Shown: one piece after another, positions 567-51,849 of the stretch
Numbering within the stretch: the first letter of the stretch is position 1
Layout of the letters: every line of letters begins with the position of its first letter
Origin: Aplysia californica
Lineage: Eukaryota
Assembly: GCF_000002075.1 (NCBI RefSeq)
Contig: NW_004797282.1
Span: 2,292,830 to 2,354,799 of the forward strand
Length of the DNA: 61,970 nucleotides
Reading direction: 5' to 3'
Translations under genes and position numbers: made by a program
Notes under the pieces: model-generated
The model's database searches: none
Seen by the model: the letters and a program-made list of their open reading frames with translations, nothing else
What the model was told of the DNA's origin: nothing

Positions 567-3500
567 TTAGGCCTCAACACAGTCACTGAGATCTACGTCG
601 AATAGTTTTTGGGGTACTGGTATCTCCGTAGGGTTCACGAAGGAAAGGATCTTACTGAGGCCATTTTTCTTGTCCACCAGATTTGCGGAGATGGGGAAGC
701 ATTTGTCCTTAGACATCACCCACGTTTCTTTCACGTCTGCGTTCTAGACAAAAAACAAAATAAAACATTAAAGGACCACAAAAACTTAAAGGAGTCGTGG
801 TACTAAGATGTCGTATTTTTTAAGTCACCCTGTAATGAGACAATGTACATTCAAGATGATCAATATTTCAATGATAAAACACACAAAAGCATTCTCGACT
901 TCCCAGTAGACATACAGTGCAAGCAGCCGATTAAGTTTTCATACACTAACTAACTATTGAGATCTTCCGCTACCTGTTCCTAAATTGGCGGAGTACAGAG
1001 TGTCAGACCCAGAACGGGCTTTGAATCCACGACCTTTGAGTTACAAGCCCGAAAACCTTGACTGTTTAACCGCGTCCTCAGTTTCACCAGGCAACCTCCA
1101 TGAGATAGCTTTAAGGATATACGAGTATTTCTAGGCGTGCTGACAAAATGAATCAATTCTCGGAGTTTAGCCATGCGGAAACAAATAGAAACATCACATT
1201 TACTGGTTGGGTATATGAAATGATAAAACACAGATATTTAACTTGAAGTAAAGGGTATCAATTGAAAAATTTACAAATTTTAGGAGTCTATTATTTTTTG
1301 GCATACATCTCCACTGGCGTATTACGAGAAATAACTCCTTTTATCAACACGCCAATGTCGTGGAGCCTTACTTATCACCGTGAAGCTCTGGTTCTAACTA
1401 GGTCCACTTTCGACAATTATTTGTTTGGAATATTAGAAGAGTCATAAATAAGTAGGCAATTTTAGATACTTTTATGTCCAGGCGAGTTCTGCATGGGTTG
1501 ATGGTGAAACCCCACACTCTTTCTGGCAAGCCAACCTCAAGTCTTCTCCCCGTCATTGTCGACCAGTCTGGGGACCCCTGATGTGTGCATAGGAGCAGGG
1601 GTTGCAGACGGAGCTCTGGCCAGGAGGTACCATAGTTCTGCGAGGTGCAATGTGAGCAACGACCCTTCGGCCCGAAGAAGGGTCTGCACACATCCACCAT
1701 TATTGTAGGTCTTTCGTCAAAGCAGGCCAACCTGTTCATTCAGGAACTCACTGTCGACATCTTCTTCACTCCCTCTCTCGGGAGCTCTACAGACGGGGCA
1801 TGGCACCCACAGACTGCGAGATGACTCATCGTGTGGTGTCTCCGCGGACCCAGAAGGCCTTGTAGCAGTAAGGAATAGGCTGCCTGGAAACATATGACGT
1901 CCCTACTGATATCCTTGCAAATGCTCACTGATCCATGACGGGACGATCCTCTGTCTGAGTAGATTTGGCCATCCCTTGAATTATTCTGCTCCATGAACGG
2001 AAATGTTAATAGCAGATAGCCAACTGATGGCGGGAATTGGACAAACGCAAGCTAAACTATGTAATGTAGGAGACTCGCTGTGGACGGAATGCGTTAGCCT
2101 TTACTCAACGGGACCCCTTACTGGACTGCTCAGACGATCACTGGTCATTGGTTGCTTTTTTTGGCTCCCATCCCTCAGAAATAGAGTGTGCCTACACCCC
2201 CTTATAACTGTCTACTATATAAGAAATCCCTGTGATGATGGATGGAAAACAGGACTGCGAACATTGTATCTTCGTTCTCTTGCGGCAAGATGTTTGGGCA
2301 CAAGCCAGTGTCAGAATAAGACTACCACTTAACTGAGATCCTACAGGGATGCATACAAGCCTTCAGATCCCCCAAACCAATAGAATGCCTCTACAATAAA
2401 TACAACTCTACGAGGTAGAATGTCGCCTCGGTTATGAAGGTCCGCGCTTTCTGCCTTCTTCCGGGAGCGGGAGTGCCAAGTCAGCTACTGGGACCCACGC
2501 TGCGGATATAGGGGCCATAGGCAACACACAGATACCACAGACTCCCCAACCTACAGACACACAAACATTGAATTGCAGCCTTACATCTCATCAATACAGA
2601 ACAAGAAAATGGAACTTGCAAAGATGCTGTCAGACTTAAAAATTTATGTAGCCCTGCTACTGGAAACCCAAATACCCAAGCGGATAGAGTTTCATTTGAC
2701 ATGCTACACAATGTTCCACTGCAAGTGCACCAAATGTCAAGGTATCGCAACCCTCATTCGGAATGACATCACGGCCGAGGTTTCTCACCCAGAAACCGAT
2801 GACGAAACTGACATGCAGGAAGTGAAAGTGCAGCAGTCGGATGGAACAACCTACACCATCTACAATGTATACTGCTCACCGAGAACTACTCTGCAGCTCA
2901 ATTTCCGTAAAACATACCACAAACATACATTCTTGCGGGAGATTTCAATGAACGCTCTCCGCTGTGGGGTTACAGTGATAAAGACACGACATTAACAGTT
3001 CTAGAAGAACTACTGAGATTAAGCAACCTCATTTCACTTCAATATGACAAGACACCACCCACCCTACTTCATAGAGCCAGCGGAACTCTCAGCACATCAG
3101 ACTTGACTTTGGTCTCAGACCTTCACCCGCACCGCTCCATGACTGTCCGAGATGACATAGGAAGGTCCTAGATGACATAGGAGGTGACCACCACCCAATC
3201 CTACTGCAGATATCCAGCAACATGAAACGAGAGCGACCAACCCCATAAGACGCAGTTGGAACTACAAGAAAGCAAACTGGGAGCTCTACCAATAGAATTC
3301 TGAAAGTAGACTCTTGAGAGTATGCACGACCAACCAAATTGATGAGGGCTGCAAGGACATCGCCACAGCACTAAAGACATCTGCTAAGAAAGCGATTCCA
3401 TGAGGGAACCCAAAGAAGTTCGCCCATTATTGAGACAAAGAACTGGAACAGCTAGCTGACCAAGGCCAGAAAGAAAGCCAGATGGCGAGCTGAGAAAAAC

Positions 3501-6367
3501 CCAACAGCCGAAAACAGAAAGCACTACAACTACCTGACTGCCAAGGTAAAACTGAAGAGTAAAAATGTTAAAAGAAAAACTTGGAAAGAACATTGTGGAG
3601 AACTAGACCTGCTTAAGGGCGGGAGGAAAACCTGGAACCTGCTCGTCAATCTCTCAGTCACAAAAAGAAGGAATTTCCCTGTCCCAATGAAACCAACTGA
3701 GAAAGGAAAAACATGAAGAGCTGAGGTTATGAATAAATACTTTGCTAGCATCAACAAGAAAGGAAACCAGAACAAACTGAGCAACACAATAAAGCAGCTG
3801 ACCAAAAGTGCCGAACAGACCCCCAAGGCAAACCTGGATGTGTTTGAGTAGGAGTTTATTTTGACGGAATTGAAGACTGCTCACAAAAAGTGTAAAAAGA
3901 GAAATGCTCCAAGACCAGACCACATCACCAATGAGATGATCCTCAACATGGCAGACTCTTCCCTTTCCATACTTTTGGACTTCTTCAACAGAACCTGGAA
4001 TGAGGGACAGCTTCCAATAGAATGGAAGAAGGCAAACATCACACCAATACTGAAGGACAAACCAGCAAGCCAGCCTTCAAGCTGTAGACCAATCTCTTTA
4101 ACATCATGCCTGAGTAAGGTCGTATAGAGAGATTGGTCAACGACAGACTTTACTGGTGGATGGAAAACACCGGCACAATCAGCACATCACAGACAGGATT
4201 CAGGAAAGGCAAAAGAGCTATAGACTACCTCATCAGATTTTCCCAGAAGACCAGGGATGCCTTACAAGATAAAAACAATGTTGTGACCTGAGGCAGGCGT
4301 ATGATCGTGTGTGGAGACAGGGACTGTTCTACAAAATACAAAACCTTGGGATAGCAGGAAGGATGTACAGCTGGGTCAAGAACTTTCTGTCTAGCAGAAC
4401 TATCGAGACTTCGTATGACAACAAGATTTTTTCACAGAGGACACTCGAGGAGGATCTTCCACAGAAGCCAGAACTCAGCTGTACCCTCTTCCTGTTGTTT
4501 ATAAACGACTTGCCAGATGCATCTCCAGACAGAAAGCACTCTACCCTAACGACTTGGTCATCTGCAGCAAAGGAAGTGACATGAGAGTATTGAACCATGC
4601 CATTAACATGGACCTGAATACTATCTCGTCCTACTGCCCGCTATGGAAGATGGAAATCAGCACACACAAGACTGTTTTTGGACTCTTCAGCCTCAAAAAC
4701 AAGATTACAGCAGGTCAGGTAAACCAGGTAAACCTGAAGATCAATGGAACCAACATTAAATATGAGGACTATCCCAAGTACCTTGGTGTACAACTGGAAC
4801 GAAATTTGTCTCTCAAAAAGCACTTAGGTGAGCTGACCAAGAAAGCCACCTCCAGACTAAACCGTCTGAAATTACTTTCATCAATCAACTGGGAAACTGA
4901 CAAAGCAACCCTCCGACAACTCTGGGTATGTCAGATCTGTGATTGATTACTCCCTACCACTACAATCCATAGCCAGCCAAAGCTCTTTGGCCCAGTTTGA
5001 CAGAGTAGAGAACCATGCGCTCCGATTTGTTTATGGCCACTCTTACTATCGCCTGCAAAATCCACACCAATATAGAACGACTGAACCTCAGAAGAAAGAG
5101 TGCTACACTCGAAACCTACGAAAGATTTGTGCGGCTAGAAGACACGAATGAAAACAGGAAAATGGCAGATGAGTGGGAACCAAGAATACGCGTTCAGGAG
5201 ACCTCCTTCATACGAGGAGCAACAAAACTACTTAAGGAGTTTGACCCACCTTAGAACTGAGAACCAATCTCCAACATCAGCAGTAAACCTTCATAATATT
5301 GGCAGGCACCAGAAATCAAAATAAGGACGAAACTTTTAGACCTCTCTTGTGACAAGAAGAAATCCAGAAGAGGTCTGACCAGAAGAAATCCCCAAAACCT
5401 GGAGACAGTGGACTCGTATGCTGAAACTCCAATACATGCACACACAGATAGGTCAGCAACAAACGGTACACGGAATACTGGATACGGATCTATCATCAAA
5501 TATCGAAACAACATTGGAAAAAAGAAGCAGACCCAACTATCTGTCCCATGTGGAACATACAGCTCCAACTATGATGCAGAGAGAGTTGCCATAACAAAGA
5601 CCCTGGAGGAAATCACCCAAGACTTTTTTGAAGACGCAGTATCAGCAGGAGATGTTATTGTCTTCTCTGACTCAATGTTAGTACTCCAAGCTGTCGAGGG
5701 AGGTTGAGACTACAGAGGTGACGGGAACATTCTCAGCTTTGTAAAACAGAAGGGCACTTCCTTTGGCGTCCGGAGCACACTGCACGGGGTGCCTAGCCGT
5801 TCTAGAGTACCAGGGAATGAAACTCCAGACCAGCTATCAAAGGCTGGAGTAAGCCTGTCCCAAACAGACACAGTCGCCTCTTTACAGACCTTTACAGGGA
5901 TCATCCAAGCCAAAAACAGACAAGTGGCTAAGGAGATGGGCCAAGGAAGAAACAGGAAGGTCTCTCTTCGGGTACATGGTAAAAATAACCCCTAAGGTCC
6001 TTCGAATCTCCTATGTAGAGCTGATCAGACAATGATCTTCAGAGCCCGCACATGACGCTTACACACCAACAAGCACATAAACAGAATTAACCCACCTAGG
6101 AACCCCATTGCAGGCACTGTGACTACCACTAGGAGACCGTTGAACATCTTCTCCTTCAATGCCCAAACCTGGCAGTTCTTTGACACAGGCTCCTACAAAC
6201 ACAAACAGACTTACAAAGCCTGCTCTTCTGAGGCATTTACCAGATGAAAAGGACGTGTGGTTACTTGAGAGAGGCATTGCGCAGCTAAGAGCGAAATGGT
6301 CTCAGCTAAAAGGATTTGAAAACAAAAACAACAACATGCCCAGGCGTGCGGTAGGAAAGGGGAGGGG

Positions 6368-6399
<32 letters not shown>

Positions 6400-9300
6400 T
6401 ACATTTCTCAGCATATCTTCGATTAATCTTACAAATGGGGGGAGCTGACAGAATATTTGGTTTCTGACCTCATGGCCATAGTAACTCAAAATGGCCAAAA
6501 ATGTTGGACAGAACTTTGTACTTGTAAGGTAGCCATTTAACATCGGTTTTTATTAGCAGAGCAAAGTCTGTTATTAATTATTCTAATGGTCAACTCACGT
6601 CCACTTCCCAGGCAGCCACGTCAGGAGCTTCATAGACCAGAGTGGCGTCTTGATCGATACAATGAGGCACGTACTGCTTGTTGGGCAGGTCAGTTACTCT
6701 GGCAGGGAGGGAAAGTACATCATCCATTAAATCCTTTCTATCGTAATCATCTTGTAATTTAAGTATTCTTATAACCTATAAAGCATTCAATGTTAGAATA
6801 CTATTGAGTTACACCACATCATGTTTTCATGAAAAGACAAAAGCTCAACTATTTCCGAACTATGGACTACACAGATTTTCATTTATTAGGCATTTAAATG
6901 TATCATGAGGAAGTATTATTTTTTTAGGGTACTTTTTAACTTTTTAATGGGGGGGGGGGGTGTACACCCCAAAAGTCCCGAATCCACTCAAGACTATGGA
7001 TTTTAAGTTGCAGGCATTTCTAGCTTCTTCAGCCTCTCTTTCTATTATTTCATCGCATAAGAACCCCCTAAAGCATTATTACTTCCCATACCGGGCATTA
7101 CTGTCTCCACCATTTCCTCGTGAAGTCTTTTATTTTTCTTTATCGCCCGTTTTCTCGAAACGTAGTTTTTCTATATACTTTAAAAAAATTACTCCACCAT
7201 TTTTCTTTCAAACTTCTTGAAACTTTTGCAGAATGAAGAAAAGATGTATGTTTGATATATGGAATAGTTTTTTGTTGCTGGTCTATGGAGTGTGGATTTT
7301 CATGGATTTTTTGCAAACGTGAATACTACCTCAGAAAAAAAATCATAAAAGATTTTCTAGTACAATTAGGAAAAGTTCCTCTCACAGATTTGTAGATCTA
7401 TTGTTTGCAAAGATGCATGCAAAAGAACAATTTATTTCCATGAAAACTAAGTGCTGTATCAATTTCGTAAGACATGTCAACAAAACCCATTATGGCCGCC
7501 ATATCTATGGAAACACAACATTTTATCACAAATTTGAAGGCGGATTTTTAAACGTCTTATTATGATTGTTATATTTGTGAAATTTGCTAACATTTGATCC
7601 ACTAATCAGCGAGAGAGCCTTCAGATGTAGCCCGTCCTCTTAACATTGAAGATGGCTACTATAAAGTGACCAATACCCGTACTTGGGGTACGCACCCTCT
7701 CCTCATGCCGTGCACCTCAAGTGAAGCTGAATCTATTCGTGATACATACATGTTCACTGAGAATTGCTCGATACTATAAATAGCAGTGCGCATGAACACC
7801 TATGTCAACTGAAATACGTATGTAGCTTAATAATATCAATGTTAACAATTATCATGGTTGAGTTACCTTATGCATGTGGCGGGGAGCCTGTTTGTGAATG
7901 TAAACATACTATTGCATATTATGGTTATGTGTGCAGATGTGTNNNNNNNNNNNNNNNNNNNNNNNNNNNNNNNNNNNNNNNNNNNNNNNNNNNNNNNNNN
8001 NNNNNNNNNNNNNNNNNNNNNNNNNNNNNNNNNNNNNNNNNNNNNNNNNNNNNNNNNNNNNNNNNNNNNNNNNNNNNNNNNNNNNNNNNNNNNNNNNNNN
8101 NNNNNNNNNNNNNNNNNNNNNNNNNNNNNNNNNNNNNNNNNTATATGTGCCAGGATATAGACAATAAATATTTATCTTGTCTATCTTATCTATAAAATGG
8201 GGTTGGGGGGGGGGGGATGAGATGTTGCAATTTGTGATTAGCTGAGCCAGGCACGATATAAATGCTGTATAATATTCTACGATCAAATTGCATGAGTTAA
8301 CTTTTATGAATTAAATTGTAAATCACAATAAGTCGACACCCTGCTCATCAATAACACGGTCACTTCATGATCTTGAGATTTAAAAAAAAGTCAAACTTTC
8401 ATTTTCTATCTGAATCAGCATCATTTAGTGAAAAATAAAAACGTAATGCCTGTACAGTATTGGGTGTTATGAATTATGGCTGACACATTAAATGAGACAC
8501 ATTGTTATTGGAAGAAATAGAATCTGTCCATGTGGATATTACATGCATTTGCCATTCAGTCTGGTGTATCTTTTCCCAGCAACCTCGTCCATGAAGATAT
8601 AGTCGCCCTCTTGTCCCAGGACGTAAGCAATGACCTTGCCTTGAGTGAAGTCCGTGATAGCAAGATCCCAACNNNNNNNNNNNNNNNNNNNNNNNNNNNN
8701 NNNNNNNNNNNNNNNNNNNNNNNNNNNNNNNNNNNNNNNNNNNNNNNNNNNNNNNNNNNNNNNNNNNNNNNNNNNNNNNNNNNNNNNNNNNNNNNNNNNN
8801 NNNNNNNNNNNNNNNNNNNNNNNNNNGGATAGAGAATGAGATGTGTGGGATCAGAATAAATATGACAAAGACTGTAGGCGTAAGCATCCAGGAAGTCAAG
8901 ATATGAAAAAAGGCAAGTGGTACGTTAAGCATTTTGTCAATCTACGTCCGCAATGTCTATCTCTCAGGCAAAGACGTATTATGCATACTGCATTGAGATT
9001 ATCTGTCAATACTTTCAAAAAGCCATAGATGCTGTTGTTTTGCCGTAATCAACTTTCAGACTATTTTCCTGAGGGCTATCGTTAAGTGTCCGTTTTGTGA
9101 GTTCCACAGCTGTACTCGGGAAGAGACAGAAGCAAGTGAGGCTATGACTCTGGCTGAAGACTAGGTCCTCGGGTATGTAGGAGTGTGTTGCTGTGTCATC
9201 CACATTGCCACATCTTTGACCCTTCTGACTTGCATAATTTCTAGCCCAAAAGCAAAATAAAGCACGAAAGAGACCGATATTTTTATCGTAGAATATCGAG

Positions 9301-9980
9301 ACTATTTAATATTCTTTAATGAAGTTTTTAAAAATCTTCCATGGACACGATTTAGATCATTTAGGTAAATATGCTTGTCAGGCCTATCTTGGTTGAGAGG
9401 GATACAACACCCTATCCGAAAGATATTTTCAATAGAAATTATCCCCACACAGGAATCGAACGTTCAACGACAACACACCAAACTGCTACGTTACAAGAAA
9501 TGTTTTAATGACGTAATATACAAATTATTCTGAGACGAACTGCAAGGAACAAAAACGTCGACGATCTTCAAGGTTGAAGTATTTAGTACTTGCAGAATAT
9601 TGATTAAAAATGATACTCAGAATTTATTCAAATTTATACAAATTATTCTGGGACGAACAACTGAGAACAAAAATGTGATCGATTTTTAAGAATAAAAAAT
9701 TTAGCAGTTGCTGAATGATGATTAAATGTTGATACGTTAAGTTTATTCAGATTGATGGGAAAGCGTTATTGTGACAGTCAACAGCAAAAGTTTCTAAATA
9801 GAATAGTTGACAGAGTTGCGTCAAAAGGTATACCTCGTCCCCCATGTTGTAGACAGTGATGGAAAACGAGTCTGGCATACAACAGGGTGTGGTCCCAGAC
9901 GATGGAACAGCTCCTGAGGTCGACGCAAAGGTCAAGGCCACAGCCACCAGAGGCAGGACCATACGGGCAGAAAGATCCAT
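567..9980 (-). CDS. Secreted ependymin-related (EPDR-like) protein, paralog A; 4 coding exons, 184 aa
   Basis: Exons (minus): 9980..9834, 8673..8543 (first base and acceptor in an N gap), 6698..6599, 743..567. Visible boundaries are GT/AG, phases 0/2/0, total 555 nt. Protein: MDLSARMVLPLVAVALTFASTSGAVPSSGTTPCCMPDSFSITVYNMGDE|RWDLAITDFTQGKVIAYVLGQEGDYIFMDEVAGKRYTRLNGKC|IVTDLPNKQYVPHCIDQDATLVYEAPDVAAWEVD|NADVKETWVMSKDKCFPISANLVDKKNGLSKILSFVNPTEIPVPQKLFDVDLSDCVEA*. The hydrophobic signal peptide, CCxPxxF, CIxxxA, a conserved W, CxP and C-terminal F...P..F.....C resemble the ependymin family. The gene model is firmer than the family call. Confidence 0.85.
1485..6335 (+). mobile_element. Apparently full-length but decayed non-LTR retrotransposon (APE-RT-RNase H-CCHC; I group, Ingi-like) in the last intron of paralog A
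   Basis: APE motifs (LLETQ, IYNVYCSP, LAGDFN ~2930-2950), RT motifs (RPISLTSCLSK, QTGFRKG, LFLLFINDL, KYLGV), RNase H (HTDRSA, YDAERVAI, FSDSMLVLQA, VPGNE) and a C-terminal CRHC...EHLLLQC. (CAA)-rich tail at ~6320-6335. 11-bp TSD with one mismatch: ATGTCCAGGCG 1474..1484 / ATGCCCAGGCG 6336..6346. Many stops and frameshifts. Absent from the corresponding intron of paralog B. Confidence 0.9.
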
Positions 9981-10610
9981 TTTGTGGTAAAAAGTCGTCC
10001 GGAATGTGCTATAACATAAAGTTAATACTACATGTATTCATAATGGAGATAAAGAATAAAAGGAATAATAATTTACGTCTACAGCAAACAACAAGATATA
10101 GAAACAACAGGTATCAGATCTGTAGACTTTGCCCCTGCCTCATTACTCCGGAACTAGCTTTCATACAACAAATAAAGTAAGTTATCGAACCTTAAATCAG
10201 ATGATTTAGCAAAGAGATTTTGACCTCAATATTTTATGTCCAAGGGGGTCGTTTACTAATCCATAGACTTGACAGCCGTAGTCAAGCTTGGACCTGACAT
10301 AGAACAGAAAAGGTGGAGGACGTGTCTGGAGTCCACCCCCCCCCCCTCTAACTCCGGGGGATACAAAGTTTTAAAAAGATTTAATACTACCTGGCACCTG
10401 ACATGAATGTTTTTATTGACCTGACTATAGACAGTGAACGATCTTGTCAATTTGATAGTGTTTGAGCGCGTGAAATCCGCAGCTTGCACTGTATGCTTCC
10501 GCGGAAGCCGAGAATGTTTCTGAGTGTTCTCAGAGGGTCTGCTGGGGTAATAATAGTTGTAAAGCGCATAGAACATGATCTTGAGCGTGGATATGTGCTA
10601 CATGAATGCA

Positions 10611-10623
10611 ATTATTATTATTA

Positions 10624-10654
<31 letters not shown>

Positions 10655-10655
10655 A

Positions 10656-10698
<43 letters not shown>
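10611..10698. repeat. (ATT)n microsatellite (SINE tail)
   Basis: Direct reading. Confidence 0.95.
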
Positions 10699-11365
10699 GT
10701 ACGTGATGAGAGTTAATGTTTTGTCAAAAATTACTCCTCGGACACGAGGACGGGAATCCTCTACCCGCATAATGTCAACCTAGGTTGTAACACACGTCTG
10801 TGGGTCAGCAGAAGTGCACTGTAATCGGCTCTGACGTGGAAAACTTCAAACTGGTTTTATTTGCCCATTTTTCAAGTTTGAGCAGCAGCGTCTTCTGTTA
10901 TTGCCCCAAAGACCTTACTCGAGGATTCCTAGATCGGTAGCATAATAATACCAGAAATTCATCAGCGTTTTACAAGCTCTTTGTGGTTTTTTGAGGGCCC
11001 AAATGACGGATTTGGTTTAATTTCAAATAGGAGAAGAAAAAGTTGGTTAAGATCGACAGAGAAGATCCGACACAAACCTAGAAGGAGCAGGTGACCGTTT
11101 AGACCGAGAGTATACAGCACTCTGCTGAGAATACCGGGCATCAAGGTTATGTCAAAAGATTTTTTGCTAGTCACTGAAGGCCCCGAAATGCCGTTCATTA
11201 ATACTTAATCTATTGAGAAGTCATGTTGCATAAAGTGGTTCTCAAAATCGTTTGAAAGTGAAGTCTAGAAAAGTCAATGCTTGGCAGAGCAGGACTATCT
11301 TATTGTAAGTAAAATATTGATTATTATATTATTAGCTCAACAGTTAAACATTAATTTAATTACTT

Positions 11366-11719
11366 GATAATAATAAATAATAAATAGCATTTGTACAGCG
11401 CACTACCTCGCTCTACAGCAAGCTCTAGTGCTTTACACTATAATATATTATTACCCCAGCAGACCATAGAACACTCAGAAACATTCTAGGCTTCCCAAGA
11501 AGCATATTATTATTGTGAAAGCAACTGACAAAGCGCTCAAACACAAACTGACAAGATCTTTCACTTTCTATAGCTGGTTACCCATTCCCACCTCGATGAG
11601 GTGAGGACAATTTATGTAAAGCTCCTTTCCGAAGGACACAACGTCCGGTCCCTGATGGGATTCGAACCCACGACCTTACGGTTGCGAGCTTTAGAGCCTA
11701 ACCACTAGGCCACCTATGC
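11366..11719 (-). mobile_element. tRNA-derived SINE (family 1)
   Basis: Minus strand A-box-like TGGCCTAGTGG and B-box GGTTCGAATCCC, a GTGTCCTT...AAAG body and a simple-repeat tail. Related copies at ~850-1080, 10420-10700, 13040-13180, 16540-16800, 25090-25310, 47500-47660, 50830-51170 and 52790-53110. Confidence 0.75.
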
Positions 11720-11807
11720 CACAAGCTGGAATCTGTCAAACCTTTTTGTCAAGAGGATCAGATTGGTTCTGGACTGTTATAGTAACATAATATGTGGATG
11801 TGCACGT

Positions 11808-11877
11808 ACTTACCAAAGTCCAAAGCTCGGTCTGAAATGGTTTGCATTTTGACGAGAGCAGAGCATGGGTTTATATA
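11808..11877 (-). promoter_or_regulatory. TATA box and short non-coding first exon of paralog A
   Basis: Minus strand TATATAAA 11877..11870, predicted exon ~11850..11814, donor GTAAGT 11813..11808. The acceptor TTATAG ends at 10009, leaving 28 nt before the ATG. Homologous in all four paralogs. Confidence 0.65.
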
Positions 11878-13529
11878 CTGTTCTCCTGGCATCAATCCTA
11901 GATGTGCAATGGGCGATAGTGAGTTTTTAACTGCTCCCCGACAAAAGGTTAAATAATAAACATATTATTTTATTGGTCTGTTGTCACATTATTAATAAAA
12001 ATGACAATACTTTGTTAAGATCCAGATCCCCAAAACGTTATCCATTGCAGACAACGGCTGCTGTTCCGAGAGTGAGCAACGTCTGTCTGTTTCTATCGTT
12101 AGACTCTGATTTTTTCGACTATTTTTAGATTATTTAGGAAGCAGGCTTCCTTGATTCTTCCTATCAGGACCAAGCAGAGCTGAGAGGTTGAGACATCATC
12201 ACGCTAGACAGAATGATTGTGGAACTTGATTTTTTTTTAAAAGCCACATAAAAACGTCTTAGAAGCAATAAAAAAAGCTCCCTCAAGAATCAGGCTCATG
12301 TCTTCTGTGTGCAATTGAGCACCCTGTTAGCTGAGATGGTATCATGCTTTACTATTGAGTGGATGGCCCTGGTTCGAATCTCAGACTGGGAGGTCTTGAA
12401 CTAGGGTTTTAAAAAAAAAGTTTTCAAGACTCTCAATCCATATTATTTTAAGTCGGTCCCGTCGGGCACAGAGTTTCCGCTTCTTAAATTACACCCTAAT
12501 TGTATTGACAAGGGCGTTTAAACCATTCACTCACACTTTACTGTGTGCAACAGCGTTAGGGGAGCTTAAACTATTAAATCACTGGTGTTCGTTATGAAAT
12601 GTTGCGTTTACAGTGAAGTAATCCAGTGATTTAGTTCTTCGTGTTGGCTGGCAAAAGAAGCAAGCTCGATGACAATTAGGGGAAACTATTTAATATAATA
12701 ATAATAATAAAGATTTCATTTGTATAGCATATACGAGCAGCATTTGTTGTACGACTTACAATTATTATATGCTACCTCAGAATCACAAAGTTCTGACATC
12801 TTGGGCTATTTTGAGTTACAAAGACCATGAGGTCAGAAAAGAAATGCCTTATCTGCTCTATCAAAATCGTAAGGATATTCGAAGTCATTTATCGAGATAT
12901 ACAAAGAATTGCATTCGAAAAGGCTTGACATGTTGATGAAACTCAAAAGTTTTGACGTCGAATTTCTCCAAACTAGTTATTGAGTAGATAGAACGTTATA
13001 ACAAACTGATACGTTCGTTTGTGGTCTATGCCGGGAACTAAACCCTACCGTGGATGAAGTGAGGAAATTCGTGTAAGATGCCTTTCACAAGGACTGAATG
13101 TCAGTCAGACCCAAATATGATTCGAACCCACGACATTTTGGTTGAGATTCATAGAGCTTAACTACTAGAACTCCGATGCGGAGGTTAAGAATGAACTAGA
13201 ATAAATTCTTTAAAGTTTACGGACTTAGCTATTTTTCCTTCATCATTCTTTATTTACTTAATATTATTCAGTGAACAATGATGTGCACCGCTGTGAAAGA
13301 GGTTCTTGAAGGAAGGATGTGGGGGGCAGTAGATCCAGGGGTAGACAAAGAGTTTTTGAATGGTCAACAACAGAGTTCAGCACCAGAAAATCTATCACAC
13401 AACTGCATTTTTTGAACACACCCATACACTGTAAACAAAATTTAAAAATAACGACAAACTCATCAGACTATTCGCCCCAGGGTCATCGAAAACCTCAAAG
13501 CTTAGACTTTTCCCAAAATAGATATTGAA

Positions 13530-14150
13530 CAATTTCTTTTCCCCGACCCCCTTCCGTAGCACCTCACCAAGGCAAAAGTAGATCTATAACTCAACAAACA
13601 AATCAAGTACACACACCAAAACATTTAAAGCTGTATTAAAGCTAAACTAATTAAAACATGCTCCGATGCAGAGTATATCTTCACAGATGGCTCTAAATCA
13701 GACTTAGCTGTGGGCGTCTGCGCCCTGTGCTGAAACTCCATCCTGAAGCCTCCATTTTCTCTGCCAGAGGCCAGTTACAAAATTCCCCTAAAACACCTTT
13801 CCTTTTTCTGGACTTATCCGATAACTCTCCTAAAACATCTATCCTTATCCTGTCTGACTCTCTATCCTGCATCACCTCACACACAAATTACACTTTTCAT
13901 GCTCCCAAAAATAGTTAAGTTGCAACGAAAAATACCCACTTTAATGGAAAAGGGGAATAACATAGTGCTCACATAGCTCCCCAGCCGTGTGGGCATCCGA
14001 GGAAACGAGCAGGTCGATCTACCGACGAAGGAATCATTGTCCCTTCTGTTGGGATCAACGGAGAACATTCTCCAACAGACTGATTTTAAAGATAAGTAAA
14101 GAACTTTTACTAGATCTACACCTCCAGTCTGTGGGAGACGCAAGACTTAA
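13530..14150 (+). mobile_element. RNase H fragment of an I-group (Nimb/I-like) LINE
   Basis: Across frames: IFTDGSK (~13677-13697), LHPEASIFSA, ILSDSLSCI, PSRVGIRGNEQVD; degenerate. Confidence 0.75.
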
Positions 14151-14761
14151 CTTCAATTCAAGTGTCCCGTAAACTTTGTCTTATCTTGATTGCTTTTATG
14201 ATCGAGCGCCCACGTGGATTTCTTCAAGTACTACCGTATTTTCATTTTTTTCCCCTTTCAAGATGTTCTCAGCAATTTCCATTTCTGCTGCTTTTATTTC
14301 ATTTTCACTGTCTTGGTGATTGTCCACCATTAACAGAACTTTCATTTTGGAGAGCACCGAAATATTGAGCTTTAAAAAAAAATAATTAAATAAATAATAT
14401 GTAGTATTGGTTGCATGTCCTCAAGAAACATTTTCTTAAACGTCAAATCTAAAAACAAGCCAGAAAAAAGGCACAAAATGAGTAAAATCGTTTTAAAAAA
14501 TGAAAGTTTTTTTCTTCTTTAAATCTCTTCTGTAAAAACTGTGTTTTTGGCCTGAATATTATTTCTCAACAGCTTGCCTATTATATTACTATATTATGGA
14601 ATTTCACGATCACAAAAAACAGAAACCACGAATACAATATTACATTTGCATTTTGTTGTCTAGCTTTCTAGAATATAAACGTATTTTATTCTCTTTGTAC
14701 ATTTGAAAAACTCACACAAAAATGAAGTATCTATGAACTGCTATTCAGTTTGAAAGAACCA

Positions 14762-14762
14762 G

Positions 14763-14832
<70 letters not shown>
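14762..14832. repeat. (CAA)n microsatellite
   Basis: Direct reading. Confidence 0.95.
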
Positions 14833-14833
<1 letters not shown>

Positions 14834-16805
14834 AAATATCCCCTATATTAAAAAAGAAATTAAAAAATCACCACTACACTAAGATACAACCGGAATTTGA
14901 GGCAATAATTAGAATGATTTTGGCTATAACACTTTATGGCATTGCTGAACAGTTACCTTTTTTTTTTCTTTCATGATTAAAGGGAGACATTTCGCTAGGC
15001 TTTGAAAGCTTGGAGGATTCACGCGTGTAGAATCTTTGTTTAAAGTTTATACTCTGCCTTTTAGCACTTGCTTTCAAAACATTAGAACTGCTGGTCTACT
15101 TCTATAGCCACTGTGATAAGTAGAACAGCTTTTAAACTGGTTTAATCTGATTCGATTGTAAATGTTTTGTGCATTCTTCGAAACAGTTTTCATCGTTTGG
15201 GAGGTGGGCTGCTTACACCCTACCTACCAGTACGCCTTGACTGGGATGATTTTGTTAGTACCGAAAGACTAATATATCGGATGAACTATTAAAGCGATAT
15301 CTACGAGTATTATGTTACGTTACAAAACAAAATCGCACTGTTTTTGCGTTGCTATAATATATATTTGTAACACACTGAGAGCCAGTTTTCTCTGAATCAA
15401 GGTTGAGCGCTATACACATTTTANNNNNNNNNNNNNNNNNNNNNNNNNNNNNNNNNNNNNNNNNNNNNNNNNNNNNNNNNNNNNNNNNNNNNNNNNNNNN
15501 NNNNNNNNNNNNNNNNNNNNNNNNNNNNNNNNNNNNNNNNNNNNNNNNNNNNNNNACTGAGTGACAATTCATAGGCACTTTTATTTTAATTGAGTTATAT
15601 AAGATACAGAGAGCTACATTGTGTTACCTATTCGTGTGTGTCGGCAGAACGCTATGCTTTTAGCAGAACGGTCCTACAAACCAAAATTGGAAACGAACAT
15701 GATTTCTACTAAATGCAACATTGTCAAACCGCATTGAAATTAACCATACGGCAAGCTGCTAGCTTGTATAAAGAATAAAATACGTTTCTATTCCAAAGAA
15801 GTAAATAATAAAATGCAAATGTAATAGTGTGTGCTCTGCATTTTGTGATCGTGAAATAAATTCCATATTATTATTTTCGGCAAGTTGTTGAAATATATTA
15901 AGCCCATAAACACAATTTTACTGAAGAGGTTTGAAGCAAAAAAAACAACTGTTTAATTCTTCTTAACAATATTATGTTACCTATTTTGTGCCTTTTTTCA
16001 AACTTTTTTTCAACGTTTAATTTAGGATTTGACTTTTGACAATAATATAATATCTTGAGGACGTTCAACCAATACTACACATTGAAAATGATCTTTTTTT
16101 CTCTCAAAATTTGGGCTTTAGCAAAATGAAAGTTCTATGAATGCTGGACAATCACTAAAGACAGTAAAAATGAAATAGAAGAAACAGAAAAGTAGTTTCT
16201 AAGGAGACTGTTGAGAATATCTTGGAAGGAAAAGAAATCAAAATGCGGTGGTACTTGAAGAAGCCCACATGGGCGTTCACCGTTAAAAAACATTACCGGC
16301 GCCCTACCCTAAAACTTCATCCCGAAGCCTCCATGTTCTTTGCTACTCTTGCCTGCCCCTGGGTCACATGCTCCACACCCTTCCTTCAAGCACCTCTTTC
16401 ACAATGGGGCACACCATTGTTCACTGAATAGTATTAAGTAGATCTAAGTAAAGCGTGGTAAAGGAATAATAGCTGAGTCCGTTTAACGAGGAAAATTTCA
16501 AAGAATTTATTCTAGTTCACTCTTAACCTCAGCGTCAGTGTTCTAGTAGTTAAGCTCTAGGAATCTCAACCATAAGGTCGTGAGTTCGAATCCCCATTCT
16601 AGGCCTGACATTGTGTCCTTGTGAAAGGCACTTTACATAAACTTCCTCACTTCACCCTGGGTGTGAAATGGTACCGACATAGACCACTAAAGATCTTATC
16701 AGTTTGTTAGTGTTTGAGTGCATGTAAACTGCAGATTGCACTGTTTGCTTTCAGAAAAGCTGAAAATATTTCTGAATCGTATTGTAGGGTGTGCTGGGGC
16801 AATAC

Positions 16806-17041
16806 GCTACCTCAGAATCACAAGGTTGCTCAATAACTTGTTTTGAGAAATTCGACGTCAAAATTGTTGAGTTTCACAATATGTCAAGTTTTTTAGAATG
16901 CAGTTCTTTGAATGTCTTGATAACGACTCCAAATATCGTTACGATTTTTATAAAACAGATAGAGCACTTTCTTTCGCACCTCATGGTTTTAGTTACTCAA
17001 AATCGGCCAAAAATGTCAGAACTTCGTAAATCTGAGGTAGC
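16806..17041. mobile_element. MITE with GCTACCTCAGAATCACAA-type terminal inverted repeats (TIRs)
   Basis: Starts GCTACCTCAGAATCAC and ends TCTGAGGTAGC. Related copies at ~12770-12990, 22613..22860, 24367-24600, 34303..34711, ~47950-48335 and ~6400-6535. Confidence 0.75.
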
Positions 17042-17134
17042 ATATAATGGTTGTAAACCGCACAGAGAATGCTGCATGGCGAGGATGTGCGCTATTCAGA
17101 TGCAATCGCTATCTATTAGATTTAATTGTTTCTA

Positions 17135-17527
17135 ATATGTGAGGCAGCGTGGTGGAATCAGGCTCTCGTCAATTTTTGGGCATGTAGAGTTATTGGTGTC
17201 ATCCATTTATCTTGAATGCAAGTCAAAATATTTGATAATGAAGGAGATGGAGTCACCTGTTTTCAAAGGTAAAATTAGTGGGAAAATGGCCACCAAAGAT
17301 TAGTTATTTCCTTCGCTTAAGAGTCCGTGGTAACTGAAAACTTACATTTTTTGTGCCTTTAATCAACGTTTTTAAGAAAAATCCACACAGAAATGAGTTC
17401 TTCAATGGACATGAAAGGTGTTGAGCCAAAAAACAAAAATTTCATAAAAACTCACAAACCTGCGGAAAAATACAAGTTTCTTCACTATTTTGACGAGAGC
17501 CTGATTCCACCACGCTGCCTCACATAT
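17135..17527. mobile_element. MITE with ~38-bp perfect TIRs
   Basis: ATATGTGAGGCAGCGTGGTGGAATCAGGCTCTCGTCAA ... TTGACGAGAGCCTGATTCCACCACGCTGCCTCACATAT; no coding capacity. A second copy lies at 56540..56983. Confidence 0.88.
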
Positions 17528-17534
17528 ATTATTA

Positions 17535-19040
17535 TTGTTCCGCACTAATTACCTGTCGGTGTAATCTTAAGATTGCGCTGCGCGATTGAACGATCGTATG
17601 ATTGCGCGGCATTTTGAAGATTGCGTTAATATTTCAATGTTAATTTAAAATTCAATTTTCATATTTTAAAATTTTTGAAAATATCTGAATGTTCCTTGAT
17701 GTGAGTAAAAGAATAAAGATGAAAGTGAATAATAAAAATAATAATAAATTATTTCAAAAATATAAAATATTAACGCAATTTTAAGATTGCCGTGCAATTA
17801 TCATCATCATCCGGTGCCTTGCCGACTGGCGTGGGCGATCATGGACCTCCACTTCCATCTATCTTTCGAAGCAGCAATGGTGTCTGTTATTCTTGCTGCT
17901 CACGGCCATGTTGTCATCTTGTCCAGTATCTTTTCCCTCTGTCTGCCTCTACCTCTCTTTCCATCAAACTTTCCTGTTGTTACAATGTTCTCTAATGCTT
18001 CTTTCCGCATTGTGTGTCGAAAAAATTTGCCTGTCGTTTTCTTATATTCGTGATAAGTTGTTTTCTATAATTTGCTTCAACCAGGACTTCTTCATTTGTT
18101 TTTCTAGCTGTCCATGGGATACGTAGCATGCGTCTCATGAACCACAACTCTGCCGCAACAATTGTTCTTTCCAGCTGTTTATTGATTGCCCATGCTTCGC
18201 ACCCGTATAATAGGGTTGGCTCGATGTAACTTTTCATTACTCTTTTCCTCTTTTCCAGTGACAGATTGATGTTTGTTAGTATCTGTTTCATCTTGTGGAA
18301 GGTTGCTTTTGCTTGGCAAATGCGGCTTTTAATTTCGGTGTGACATCTACCATCTGATGATATAATGGTCCCCAAATATTTAAAATGTTGTACTTGCTTC
18401 AGGGTGGTATCATTGATTTTGATATTGCATGTTGGGATTGGAGTATTTCTGCTTATCTCCATCGTTTCGGTTTTCTTGATGTTTAGGTTTAAGCCCATGT
18501 TGTCACTCTCTTGTACGATGACATTTAATAGATTCTGCAGGTGTTTTTCATCTTCTGCTATTAGGACTTTGTCATCTGCATATCTTAGATTGTTTATATT
18601 GTGTCCCCCTATCGAGATACCAGGCATTTCTTCTATGTGTCTCATGATACTTTCACTATACAGGGAGAACAAGACTGGAGAAAGTACACATCCTTGTCTG
18701 ACTCCCTCTTTTAATCTGTATGTATTCGCTGATGTCATTTTCTATTCTCATTGCAGCAGTTTGATCCCAGTACATGTTTTTGATAATCCGTAAGTCCTTC
18801 CCGTCGATATTAAGAACTTCCAGCATGTCGATGATCTTGTCGTGCCTGATTTTGTCGAATGCCTTGGTGTAGTCTATAAAACATAAATGAAGATCTTTCT
18901 GAACTTCTAGGGCACGTTCTATTGTTGTTCTGATGACATATATGGCATTTACAGTGCCTTTGCCCGTGCAATTATACGATCGTTAAAACGCTCAGCACAA
19001 TCTTAAGATTGCATCGATCGGTAATAATTAGCGCGGAGCA
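17535..19040. mobile_element. Fold-back MITE with ~75-bp imperfect TIRs, interrupted by an RTE insertion
   Basis: 17536-17610 (TGTTCCGCACTAATT...AATCTTAAGATTG...AACGATCGTATGATTGCGCGG) is the reverse complement of 18964-19040, apart from scattered mismatches. Confidence 0.75.
17802..18963 (-). mobile_element. 5'-truncated RTE-clade LINE (RT C-terminal half)
   Basis: ORF 17992..18738 has GVRQGCVLSPVLF, LRYADD, FKYLG, LLYGCEAW; FIDYTKAFDKI lies upstream near 18850-18885. (GAT)n 3' tail at ~17802-17811. Perfect 12-bp TSD CCGTGCAATTAT at 17790..17801 and 18964..18975. Confidence 0.93.
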
Positions 19041-20142
19041 TTGTCATCGAACTCACTTTTTTTCTAAACGAATGGAAGAACTAAATCACTGAATTACAGC
19101 ACTATAAACGCAAGATTTGACAACAAATACCAGCGAAGTAATGATAAACTCTTCTAACGTTGTTGCGCATGGTAAATGTTCGTGTATAGGTTAAACGTTC
19201 CTGTCGATACTATTCGGGTATCTAAGAAGTGGGACCTCTGAATTTAACGTCTGTCTCCGATAGGACTGAATCAAAATATGGGTCCAGACTGATTCCTGGG
19301 AGAAACGTTTTATTGATTTTTAAAGGGATTTTTTTGCTGTTGTTGGTATTTTTCTTCAAATCGATTTCCCTGGGGCTCTCGAGGTCCAAAGGTTACTGTG
19401 TTCGCTTCTCATTCAATAGGTCCCGAGTTCTAAACTTGACAACTACGGAATATTTTCTTCTTTAAATTGTTCTCCTTTCCCCTTTTTCCCTGCTCTTTAA
19501 CCATGTTCTGTCGCCTTCTCTTGTCTCCATTTTCTGCCACTCTCCCTCCCCCCTTTGCCCCTTCCCCTTGGGCTCCAGACTCTTTCTGCAGTCTTTCTAC
19601 TGAAAAAGATCTTACCCCAAACCTTCTCTATTAAGGCGGGAAATCTAGGAGATCCCGTCTGCAAGATGCGTATGTTAAAGATCCCTTGGTGGTCCAAAAT
19701 CGATAAGAATATACTTTGGCCTCCATTCGGACAAAATTCAAAATTTTATACCAACTGAAAATGTTTAATGTGTTCCGCGCACTCATTTGACCTTGTGCAG
19801 TTGCAAGCCCCGTAAAACTCTTTTAAAAAAACGAGCCCCCCCCTCCCACATCTGTATACGGAGATGTTCTGTCCACGCTCTCCACTCAGGTTGGCCCAGG
19901 GTCCGGCCAGGTAGTATCAAAGCAGCCGGCCTCCTAAATAGCCTAAATAGAGTCGGATCGGCCGTACTCTTACGATAGAAACCGTACCGGATTATATTTT
20001 TGGAAAACTGGATCTTTACAAAGTATTGCAATTTTTATTAGAAATATAACAACAGAACGATAAAATTTTGTCGCTTAATAAATTAGCAGTTAAAAACTCG
20101 CCATCACCCATTGCACATCTAGGATTAATGTCAGGATAGCAG

Positions 20143-20212
20143 TATATAAACCCATGCTCTGCTGTCGTCAAAATGCAAACCACTTCAGACCGAGCTTAGG
20201 ACTTTGGTAAGT
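20143..20212 (+). promoter_or_regulatory. TATA box and short non-coding first exon of paralog B
   Basis: TATATAAA 20143..20150, predicted exon ~20170..20206, donor GTAAGT 20207..20212. The acceptor TTTTATAG ends at 21557. Confidence 0.65.
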
Positions 20213-21340: not shown

Positions 21341-21585
21341 TAAATCGTCTCATGTAAGGATCGATAACTTATCTTTTTTGTCTTATAAAAGCTAGTGCCT
21401 AAGTAATGAGACAGGAAAAAGGTCTACAGATCTGATACCTGTTCTTTCTTTTTCTTGTTGTTTGCTGCAGATGTAAAGTTATTCTTCCTACTATTTGCTA
21501 TTTTAATTATTCTTTATCTCCATTATGAATACATGTAGTATTAACCTTATTTTATAGCACATTCCGGACGACTTTTTACCACAAA

Positions 21586-22999: not shown

Positions 23000-23062
<63 letters not shown>

Positions 23063-26750: not shown

Positions 26751-26755
<5 letters not shown>

Positions 26756-36922: not shown

Positions 36923-36978
<56 letters not shown>

Positions 36979-48984: not shown

Positions 48985-51849
48985 TGTATCCATGCTAGTG
49001 TGTATGTGTATTATTGTATATTATTATTATGTTTGTAAGCGAATGTATGAATTGAAATATTTCCGTATGCGTTTATGCTTGTGTACGCGTGTGTATTGGT
49101 GTTTGTGCGTTCATGTATGTATATTTGGTGCCTGTGTAAGTGTGTGCGTTTGTGTGTGTGTGTTTGTGTGTGTGTGCGTGTGTGTGTATAAATGTCTATG
49201 TGTGTCTGTGTATTATATGGGGTTGAATGCCCCAATTTAACGGCCACAAGGAGGTCTAGCTTTTGGCCCACAACTAAGAGCATTTTCAGATTGTCAAACA
49301 ATAGTAACTGGCACATGCAATCTGTAGCACACTTATAGTTTTTGTCGTATGATCCCTCCCTACCCCCCCCCCCTTCCTTTTCCAATCATACCCCCAAACC
49401 ACCCATCATCGCCCGTATCAGCGTTGGGACCTCGCTATATTTGACTTTACCGTAAACAAAATGATGGCTTACGTTTTGGGTAAAGATGGCGACTATATCT
49501 TGGTTGACGATGGAGCCGCTAAAATGTACACACGATTGGAAGGCAAATGCAGGTAACGTTCAAATCTACAGGTTCTATTTCTTTTGAAGAAAAAACATTT
49601 TGATTTCCAACTAAATGAGGTTACATACTACATATTATTGATAGTAAAATTCCAGAAACGGACTTTCTTTGAATGGTATTTATTTATAACCCAGCAGTAT
49701 GGAAATTTGTAATAAGCAGAGGAGCACTCTCACCAAAATTGAGAAAATATGGTCAATTAAATTCTTACAAATCATTGTGGACATATATCATATTATAATA
49801 TATCACGCTTTAGATTTTCTTCAGCAGGTCATCACCTCCCCGTAATGTGCCTCGCTGCAGTTTCATTTTGTCATCCTGGCTTTGCTCGTCATAATAAAAT
49901 GTAACGTTTGACTTCCTTCCCCTCTCCTATCCAACCCCATATCCATCCACCACCAACTCCTCATCCCCCATCCCCGAACACCTAATCCCCTCACCCCCCT
50001 CCCCAACCCGTCATCCCTCTCCACCAACCCCTCACTCCCATACCCCAACACGCANNNNNNNNNNNNNNNNNNNNNNNNNNNNNNNNNNNNNNNNNNNNNN
50101 NNNNNNNNNNNNNNNNNNNNNNNNNNNNNNNNNNNNNNNNNNNNNNNNNNNNNNNNNNNNNNNNNNNNNNNNNNNNNNNNNNNNNNNNNNNNNNNNNNNN
50201 NNNNNNNNNNNNNNNNNNNNNNNNNNNNNNNNNNNNNNNNNNNNNNNNNNNNNNNNNNNNNNNNNNNNNNNNNNNNNNNNNNNNNNNNNNNNNNNNNNNN
50301 NNNNNNNNNNNNNNNNNNNNNNNNNNNNNNNNNNNNNNNNNNNNNNNNNNNNNNNNNNNNNNNNNNNNNNNNNNNNNNNNNNNNNNNNNNNNNNNNNNNN
50401 NNNNNNNNNNNNNNNNNNNNNNNNNNNNNNNNNNNNNNNNNNNNNNNNNNNNNNNNNNNNNNNNNNNNNNNNNNNNNNNNNNNNNNNNNNNNNNNNNNNN
50501 NNNNNNNNNNNNNNNNNNNNNNNNNNNNNNNNNNNNNNNNNNNNNNNNNNNTATATATATATATATACATTGCATATGTGCAATCTAATATGTATTTGCT
50601 GTGCAGGATGACGTAATGATGCCAAATAATAATAACTGCATTTACACAGCGCATATTTACGCTCTACAATGTGGTCTATGTGCTTTACAACTTGTCGGTA
50701 CGCTTTTCTTTAGCGCTTATAAATGGCTGCTTGCATTGTATGCTTCCCAGGAAGTTGAGGTTGTTTCAGAATGCTCTCAGGTCTGCTGGGGCTATAGTAT
50801 AGATTGTAAAGCGCATAGATCTTGCTGTTGAGCTGGGGTTTGCGCTATACAAATGCTATCTATTATTATTATTATTATTATTATCATTATTATTATATAT
50901 TAACCCCGTAGACACTTGCACGCTCAGAAATATTCTCGGTTTCTTGGGAAGCACACAGTGCAAGCTGTGAATTACACGCGCTAAAGAACTAATAAATTGA
51001 CAAGATATTTTGCAGTCTTCGCCGGGTACCCAACCCCACCTTGATAAAGAGAGGGACATTTCTTTTTAAAAAAACTTTCCCTGGGACACGATGTCGGATC
51101 CCTGACCTGATTCGAACCCACGACCTTACGGTTGATAGTAAAAGAGACTGACCACTGGAGCCTCAGCACCACAGAAACCTTACACAATAAAAATCCTGGC
51201 ACCATGACTCCTTTAAGTTCAGCTGGTCATCTAATGTTTTGTCCCCTCCCCACCACTAGGGCAGTACTACTGGAGGGATATTAACATGTTCTAATATTAT
51301 GCACAGTAGAATTGTAGATGGGCTGATTTATCAATGTCATGCTCATACTGTGCCGGAACAACATAGTGGGAACTGCTGCTTTTTCTTTCCTCCTCCTTAC
51401 TGTCATCAATTTTCCTCTACTGCTTTTGTATGTTCGTCACTCTCTTATGAACTGCTATATCCGGGGTGCCTTGATAGTCGAAGCAGACTTTGTGCTGTTG
51501 ACGCTAGAGAGGTGAGAAGAGTAAACCTGATTCCACGTTTGGACTTCTCTGTTGACATCCACCCCTTGGCGCCTATACGACCTTATGCCTTTGCGAGCGC
51601 TGTAAAACCTTACTAAAACTAAAAACTAACTATTGTTTTGTTTGGCCTTTTCCCTCCTGTCGTCTCCTACAGAATGATGACGTGAAAGAAACATGGATGA
51701 TGTCACGGGAAAACTGTTTCCCCATGTCCGCTCTGCTGGTGGACAAGAAAACTGGCGGCGAGAAGATCGTTTCCTTCGCAGACCCGGCCGAGATACCAGT
51801 ACCCGCGACAATCTTCGACGTAGACCTCAGTGACTGTGTGGAGGCTTAA
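48678..51849 (+). CDS. Secreted ependymin-related (EPDR-like) protein, paralog D; exon 3 probably in N gap
   Basis: Exon 1 48678..48803 (MALELSTRVFLPLVAVALTLELTSACCMPDRFSITINNMGEE), exon 2 49422..49552 (RWDLAIFDFTVNKMMAYVLGKDGDYILVDDGAAKMYTRLEGKC), exon 4 51673..51849 (NDDVKETWMMSRENCFPMSALLVDKKTGGEKIVSFADPAEIPVPATIFDVDLSDCVEA*), all GT/AG. The 100-nt exon 3 is not visible. The gap 50055..50551 follows a C-rich tract like the one before exon 3 of paralog C. Confidence 0.78.

What the first reader, a model, noticed from the sequence alone, without database searches (positions are those of the whole stretch)
567..51849. Hidden four-gene cluster of divergent secreted six-cysteine ependymin-like proteins
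Seen: four sets of homologous exons with matching lengths (131, 100, 177 nt) and phases, which splice into a signal peptide plus a ~160-aa domain with six conserved cysteines (CC, GKC, CI, CFP, DC). None appears as a recognisable full ORF in the track. Established: ependymin-related proteins are secreted or lysosomal, have a LolA-like half-barrel that binds lipids, and occur as lineage-specific expansions in molluscs and echinoderms. Inference: this is a divergent, compact, probably uncharacterised subfamily in birth-and-death evolution, with two intact genes, one probably intact gene and one decaying gene. It could be a secreted carrier or signal system for hydrophobic ligands.
Basis: partly seen in the sequence, partly recalled or inferred. 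Interest (0 to 1): 0.85.

Follow-up and report, generated by a model that had tools for sequence, protein, structure and literature searches.

The report
Unannotated sea-hare ependymin-related gene cluster
A sea hare carries a real, mostly unannotated cluster of six genes for small secreted proteins of the known ependymin-related family, which probably carry fat-soluble molecules; these are new members of a family already known to be expanded in this animal.

Summary
The four exon sets are real. Gene B (+, 21586-25636) splices to 184 aa with six cysteines. A transcript contig joins all three introns at the predicted GT..AG sites and carries gene A's letters, so A is expressed although one splice acceptor lies in a gap. 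D's exon 3 is expected exactly where a gap starts. C has a frameshift in exon 1; its exon 4 may also be in a gap. Two more copies lie just outside the window: intact gene E, and F (Aplysia californica XP_012939564.1, 'uncharacterized'). Single exons hit no Pfam family. However, an AlphaFold model of F (pLDDT 87, 11 strands) matches EPDR1 and sponge EPD-BCP1 best, then LolA. A profile of published Aplysia EPDRs and their paralogs ranks 12 of the 14 visible exons first among 2007 window peptides. These are six-cysteine (profile 2) ependymin-related proteins, a fast-diverged lineage under purifying selection, absent from the 2018 list of 37 Aplysia EPDRs. Likely role: secreted carriers of hydrophobic ligands; tissue and ligand unknown. 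New members of a known family. The scan had no earlier ependymin note on this genome.

The parts
9834..9980 (-). Gene A coding exon 1 (147 nt): signal-peptide-like N-terminus, CC motif
   Evidence: letters match the spliced transcript contig
8543..8672 (-). Gene A exon 2 (130 of 131 nt visible; acceptor and first base in gap 8673-8826), Cys3
6599..6698 (-). Gene A exon 3 (100 nt), Cys4
567..743 (-). Gene A exon 4 (177 nt with stop), Cys5 and Cys6
21586..21732 (+). Gene B coding exon 1 (147 nt)
23235..23365 (+). Gene B exon 2 (131 nt)
24200..24299 (+). Gene B exon 3 (100 nt); holds the only mature-chain N-glycosylation sequon seen in the cluster
25460..25636 (+). Gene B exon 4 (177 nt with stop); a low-depth contig covers it and the 3' flank
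30489..30649 (+). Gene C exon 1 (161 nt, one frameshift before the CC motif)
31613..31743 (+). Gene C exon 2 (131 nt, open)
32396..32495 (+). Gene C exon 3 (100 nt, open); exon 4 not visible
48678..48803 (+). Gene D coding exon 1 (126 nt; CC follows the signal peptide directly)
49422..49552 (+). Gene D exon 2 (131 nt)
50055..50551 (.). Assembly gap where gene D exon 3 is expected (not filled)
   Evidence: intron-2 homology with gene C ends just before the gap
51673..51849 (+). Gene D exon 4 (177 nt with stop)
139..26068 (.). Degenerate inverted duplication, centred near 15,200, that holds genes A and B head to head
   Evidence: intron divergence 0.20-0.29

Best explanation
A tandem and inverted-duplication cluster of six genes (E, A, B, C, D, F) for six-cysteine (clade 2, profile 2) ependymin-related proteins in Aplysia californica. 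Shown: exon structure, splicing and expression of A, purifying selection, and an EPDR/LolA half-barrel fold for paralog F. Inferred: the hydrophobic N-terminus is cleaved and the ~160-aa acidic domain is secreted; three disulfides form (Cys1-Cys5, Cys3-Cys6, Cys2-Cys4, by analogy with EPDR1 and the published clade-2 prediction); the concave sheet binds a small hydrophobic ligand (lipid, pigment or diet-derived metabolite) and keeps it soluble outside the cell. Paralogs diverge to different ligands or sites of expression, and copies are gained and lost. The beta7-beta8 hairpin that builds much of the EPDR1 dimer is about 8 residues shorter here, so these proteins may be monomers or pair differently.
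For: Splicing: one contig of run X4 (depth 580) skips all three introns at GT..AG; its differences from B (6/4/5/1 per exon, all nine listed ones) are those of gene A. Fold: AF2 model of F from 11 Aplysia sequences, pLDDT 86.8, pTM 0.77, 11 strands with a long loop between strands 6 and 7; the top 18 Foldseek rows are EPDR1 or EPD-BCP1 (E 2e-7 to 9e-6, TM up to 0.72), then LolA and VioE; VIA Z 14.8 mouse EPDR1, 14.0 EPD-BCP1, 14.9 LolA; the Atlas's independent model gives Ependymin clusters first (score 0.94, TM 0.73). Sequence: F hits Pfam Ependymin at E 0.007 and aligns at 23-30% with all six Cys to ORFs identical or near-identical to published Aplysia EPDRs. dN/dS 0.12-0.66, below 1 in all 14 pairs. 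Hydrophobic N-terminus, 11-residue hydropathy 2.5-2.7. Known ligands or pockets in the family: PMC6363788, PMC10470211.
Against: No ligand, tissue or secretion data. The folded protein is paralog F (52-57% identical in exon 4), not a window protein. Pfam score is far below the cut-off (16.9 vs 32.3 bits) and single exons give no Pfam hit. The Z-scores do not separate EPDR1 from LolA or VioE. In EPD-BCP1 the ligand binds the dimer interface, not the cleft, so the fold does not fix the binding site. SignalP was not available.
Confidence: 0.62

Rival explanations
1. The proteins are water-borne signals (protein pheromones, or carriers whose ligand is the signal), released from a gland or skin, like the EPDRs in crown-of-thorns starfish plumes.
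For: 15 of 26 starfish EPDRs are in secreted plumes (PMC6363788; PMC6280359). Lineage-restricted, fast-diverged, expressed in one of four RNA sets only. Aplysia is known to use water-borne protein pheromones (own knowledge).
Against: No tissue on record for run X4; dN/dS is below 1 throughout, with no sign of positive selection; no paper names these loci. Overlaps with the best explanation if the ligand is the signal.
Confidence: 0.2
2. They are matrix, pigment-patterning or stress/immune proteins that act by binding other proteins or surfaces rather than by carrying a small ligand, like the abalone shell EPDR 'sometsuke'.
For: Molluscan EPDRs are reported in shell, mantle, stress and pathogen studies (PMC6280359); the mature chain is acidic.
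Against: No expression data tie the cluster to mantle or haemocytes; the aromatic residues typical of the pocket are invariant in the alignment.
Confidence: 0.1
3. They are lysosomal lipid-handling proteins like vertebrate EPDR1.
For: Best structural matches are EPDR1.
Against: EPDR1 is clade 1 with a different third disulfide. A, D, E and F have no N-glycosylation sequon in the visible mature chain (F by eye), which mannose-6-phosphate sorting would need (own knowledge). Not detected in three of four RNA sets, unlike a housekeeping gene. The genome has separate clade-1-type genes.
Confidence: 0.06
4. The exons are chance matches, repeats or dead copies, or belong to an unrelated six-cysteine family.
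For: No Pfam hit for any single exon; no sequence match in PDB; single-sequence AF2 failed.
Against: Spliced transcript, dN/dS below 1, RefSeq model for F, concordant fold searches.
Confidence: 0.02

Closest known systems
Aplysia californica compact six-cysteine EPDRs of McDougall et al. 2018 (PMC6280359: Acal_add_comp65463, comp77680, c108869, comp72104, comp87775)
   Same: Six-Cys pattern, PCCxP start, W..DF, CxP and F.vDlS.C motifs, 23-30% identity over the full length; the last intron sits 42 nt before Cys5 in phase 0 as in the C178 (comp65463) and C341 genes.
   Different: The C12 genes are not in that list, form their own long-branch group (100/99 on exon 4), keep three coding introns while the C304/C366/C451 relatives have none, and have a shorter beta7-beta8 hairpin.
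Vertebrate EPDR1/MERP (PDB 6E7O, 6E8N, 6JLD, 6JL9, 6JLA)
   Same: 11-strand LolA-type half-barrel, TM up to 0.72, Z 14.8; two of the three disulfide positions; signal peptide.
   Different: 12-16% identity; clade 1; the third cysteine pair differs; glycosylated lysosomal homodimer; the dimer hairpin is longer.
Sponge carotenoprotein EPD-BCP1 (PDB 8I34, PMC10470211)
   Same: Same fold (Z 14.0; 20% identity, the highest among the EPDR/LolA-type matches); secreted; shows that invertebrate EPDRs bind hydrophobic pigments.
   Different: Four cysteines, glycosylated heterodimer with ligands at the dimer interface; no evidence of pigment binding here.
Crown-of-thorns starfish clade-2 EPDR expansion
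   Same: Clustered tandem duplicates, six-Cys type, signal peptides (PMC6280359).
   Different: Independent expansion in another phylum; release into water is shown there, not here.
Bacterial LolA / VioE
   Same: Same fold, Z 12-15; exon 4 alone draws LolA-clan clusters in the Atlas, as a weak lead.
   Different: No disulfides, 4-15% identity, no introns; no sign of recent transfer.

Membership tests
Ependymin-related proteins (EPDR) | Significant match to Pfam PF00811 at the curated cut-off | tested here: not met
   Exons: no hit. Full-length F: E 0.007, 16.9 bits, cut-off 32.3. Published Aplysia EPDRs of the sister group also miss the cut-off (16.7-25.8 bits), so this test does not define the family in practice.
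Ependymin-related proteins (EPDR) | Full-length alignment to accepted EPDRs with the conserved cysteines (criterion of PMC6280359) | tested here: met
   (E to 2e-16 in a local search, six Cys invariant).
Ependymin-related proteins (EPDR) | 11-strand LolA-type fold with long loop L7 | tested here: met
   Predicted model of paralog F. Not run on a window protein, because a joined model has no reference.
Ependymin-related proteins (EPDR) | N-terminal signal peptide | tested here: inconclusive
   Hydrophobic stretch at residues 7-20 followed by small residues in all copies; SignalP not available.
Ependymin-related proteins (EPDR) | Length near 213 aa (family median) and N-glycosylation sequons in most members | tested here: inconclusive
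   184-188 aa, shorter than the median but like the 183-197-aa Aplysia relatives; a mature-chain sequon only in B. About 30 of 420 published EPDRs also lack one.
EPDR clade 2, cysteine profile 2 | Six cysteines: adjacent pair near the N-terminus, then four at alignment positions 94, 107, 148, 186 | tested here: met
   B Cys 33, 34, 92, 106, 141, 181; definition.
EPDR clade 2, cysteine profile 2 | Placement in clade 2 in a family-wide tree | tested here: inconclusive
   Only a 58-column within-genome tree: C12 genes fall with the compact six-Cys genes, apart from clade-1-type genes (95/91), but the deep branch is weak (73/59).
EPDR clade 2, cysteine profile 2 | Disulfide pairing, secretion and ligand binding | not testable with these tools
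MERP/EPDR1 (clade 1) | Vertebrate C88-C222 pair and lack of the adjacent CC pair | tested here: not met

The most novel reading that the evidence does not exclude
A sea-hare-specific radiation of compact, mostly unglycosylated and possibly monomeric EPDRs (this cluster plus about 25 single-coding-exon relatives) that works as a lipocalin-like or odorant-binding-like repertoire for diet-derived algal pigments, defensive metabolites or pheromonal ligands in a gland secretion.
Probability: 0.15. Interest if true: 0.6.

Novelty: new member of a known kind. Interest (0 to 1): 0.33.

Why it matters
It adds five unannotated or unnamed genes and one unnamed RefSeq gene to a model organism's genome, and shows that the published count of 37 Aplysia EPDRs is too low: about 20 uninterrupted-ORF paralogs on one contig alone, of which three were recognised in that list. 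The ligands of invertebrate EPDRs are almost unknown; small, recent paralogs in a laboratory animal are a convenient place to look for them. It does not change what is known about the family's fold, origin or mode of expansion.

Tried and rejected
Pfam on single exons: nothing. Sequence search of PDB with F and with the family profile: nothing significant. Single-sequence AlphaFold of F: pLDDT 37, discarded. Profile comparison A1 vs A3: circular, both hold F's exon 4; replaced. First tree: five rows had the wrong segment; redone. Searches for relatives outside Aplysia: none in 1.84 billion representatives (exon-4 profile; the second hit P0002 is a tandem-repeat artefact) or in the 5.8-billion set; these searches are insensitive at this divergence and length-limited, so absence elsewhere is not shown. 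No paper names the loci. The look-up of encoding contigs had no record for F. The idea that F's exon 4 is an orphan or an alternative last exon of D was dropped when a full RefSeq model appeared. A cystine-knot toxin Pfam match on one relative (E 0.049) was rejected: far below cut-off and contradicted by the fold.
Full report
Observation. The window is part of contig C12 of a 927-Mb animal genome; a cluster member found later is a RefSeq protein of Aplysia californica on a contig of the same length. Self-comparison shows four sets of homologous exons. Gene A is on the minus strand (9980-9834, 8672-8543, 6698-6599, 743-567), gene B on the plus strand (21586-21732, 23235-23365, 24200-24299, 25460-25636), gene C has 30489-30649, 31613-31743, 32396-32495 and gene D has 48678-48803, 49422-49552, 51673-51849. 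Exons 2-4 are 131, 100 and 177 nt with phases 0, 2, 0. B gives 184 aa with Cys at 33, 34, 92, 106, 141 and 181 (joined only inside a script to check the frame).

Gaps. None was filled. A's exon-2 acceptor and first base are in gap 8673-8826. B's exons and splice sites are all visible. D lacks a visible exon 3, but its intron 2 follows C's intron 2 up to about 50 nt before gap 50055-50551, where the exon is due. C has a one-base frameshift ahead of the CC motif and no visible exon 4; sequence homologous to D's intron 3 (34786-35097) and to D's 3' flank (37033-37304) brackets two gaps, so exon 4 may be hidden. C is probably a pseudogene, but this rests on one base in a draft assembly.

Expression. 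Four runs were laid on gene B. In run X4 (RNA by guess, tissue not on record) one 449-nt contig of depth 580 skips all three introns exactly at the predicted GT..AG sites. It differs from B at 6, 4, 5 and 1 places in the four exons; A differs from B at 6, 4, 6 and 1, and all nine listed differences are A's letters, while E differs at 12 places in exon 2. So A is spliced and well expressed. A second contig (depth 16) covers B's exon 4 and 3' flank. Two poly-A runs (1.3-1.5 billion letters read) and one more contig set show no exon coverage, which suggests restricted expression.

Extent. Exon-by-exon searches of the genome add gene E (C12:2272711-2279201, minus, four exons, open frame, 14-20 kb left of the window) and an exon 4 at C12:2360255, 5.5 kb right of the window. 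A profile of the five exon-4 copies found one real protein among 1.84 billion: XP_012939564.1, LOC106012139, 188 aa, whose last 58 residues are this exon. I call it F. Its first three exons are not in the visible assembly; I used it only as a full-length paralog and did not place its letters in any gap. A search with F returned only itself, so A, B, D and E appear to be missing from the public protein set.

Family. Single exons have no Pfam hit and F scores E 0.007 on Ependymin, below the cut-off. The link comes through relatives. F aligns end to end, all six cysteines included, with uninterrupted ORFs on contigs C304, C366 and C451 (23-30% identity); eight of nine aligned proteins hit Ependymin weakly, and three of the ORFs are in the supplement of McDougall et al. 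2018 as Aplysia EPDRs (PMC6280359). An HMM made from those relatives alone ranks 12 of the 14 visible window exons at the top of 2007 six-frame peptides. The cysteine pattern is that paper's profile 2. An AlphaFold model of F built on 11 Aplysia sequences has pLDDT 86.8 and 11 strands with a long loop after strand 6, the EPDR1 topology (PMC6363788). Foldseek's first 18 rows are EPDR1 or the sponge carotenoprotein EPD-BCP1, followed by LolA and VioE; the independent aligner gives Z 14-15 for all four kinds; the Atlas's own model agrees.

Evolution. Amino-acid identity runs from 93% (A/E) to 52% (D/F); dN/dS is 0.12-0.66 in all 14 pairs. On exon 4 the five copies form one well supported long-branch group; deeper relations are weak. 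A and B sit head to head in a 26-kb inverted duplication. Their introns differ by 0.20-0.29 but their synonymous sites by 0.12, which hints at gene conversion. The last intron's position is shared with the C178 and C341 genes and differs from clade-1-type genes. None of the six genes is among the 37 Aplysia EPDRs of the 2018 survey, and no paper names the locus. No relative outside Aplysia was found, but the searches are weak at this divergence.

How it probably works. Shown: gene structure, splicing of A, selection, predicted fold. Inferred: cleavage of the hydrophobic leader, secretion, three disulfides by analogy, and binding of a hydrophobic ligand. From Cys4 to the conserved Trp there are 17 residues here and 25 in a typical Aplysia clade-2 EPDR. 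That shortens the beta7-beta8 hairpin which makes much of the EPDR1 dimer contact, so a monomer or another pairing is likely. The near absence of sequons argues against lysosomal sorting. A soluble carrier in a secretion or body fluid is the best reading (0.62); a pheromonal role (0.2) overlaps with it and has a precedent in starfish.

Verdict. The finding is a set of new, mostly unannotated members of a known family, in an animal where the expansion and tandem clustering of that family are already described in kind. Interest 0.33. The look-ups of earlier scan notes returned nothing on ependymins.

Noticed in passing
G000:C304:126898-273396 (L031, L032, L034, L036): About 20 EPDR paralogs with uninterrupted coding regions in 147 kb, on both strands, one with an internal stop; plus 2 on C366 and 3 on C451. 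Only three were recognised in the 2018 list. The cluster studied here keeps three coding introns, so these relatives probably lost theirs (retrocopy or intron loss, then tandem expansion).
   Followed up: partly
L048:712-7202 (G000:C12:2272711-2279201, minus): Fifth, gap-free and intact cluster gene E, 93% identical to A; nine changes specific to E fall in exon 2, four of them amino-acid changes.
   Followed up: yes
L051:6256-6432 (G000:C12:2360255-2360431): Last exon of gene F (XP_012939564.1); its first three exons are not in the visible assembly.
   Followed up: partly
window 1500-6440: Decayed LINE-like element (endonuclease, reverse-transcriptase and RNase H motifs seen by eye, many stops and frameshifts; two pieces gave no Pfam hit) in intron 3 of gene A, opposite to the gene. 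Gene A is spliced across it.
   Followed up: partly
window 42463-43865 and 43966-45366: 1.4-kb direct duplicate, 99.7% identical, on both sides of a 100-N gap; likely an assembly duplication. It holds Tc1/mariner-like transposase motifs by eye (no Pfam hit).
   Followed up: partly
window 17135-17527 and 56540-56983: Two copies of a MITE-like element with 38-nt terminal inverted repeats.
   Followed up: no
window 21545-21585 and 9981-10020: An acceptor-like TTTT..TAG lies 28 nt before the ATG of A and B, suggesting an upstream non-coding exon; conserved blocks at 11800-12035 / 19998-20220 could hold it.
   Followed up: no
G000:C696:19223-19297: Exon-3-like match (68% over 25 aa) on another contig; could not be cut out.
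   Followed up: no
G000:C341:335962-373836 (L037, L038, L040): Three near-identical last exons of another spliced EPDR group with the same last-intron position as the cluster.
   Followed up: partly
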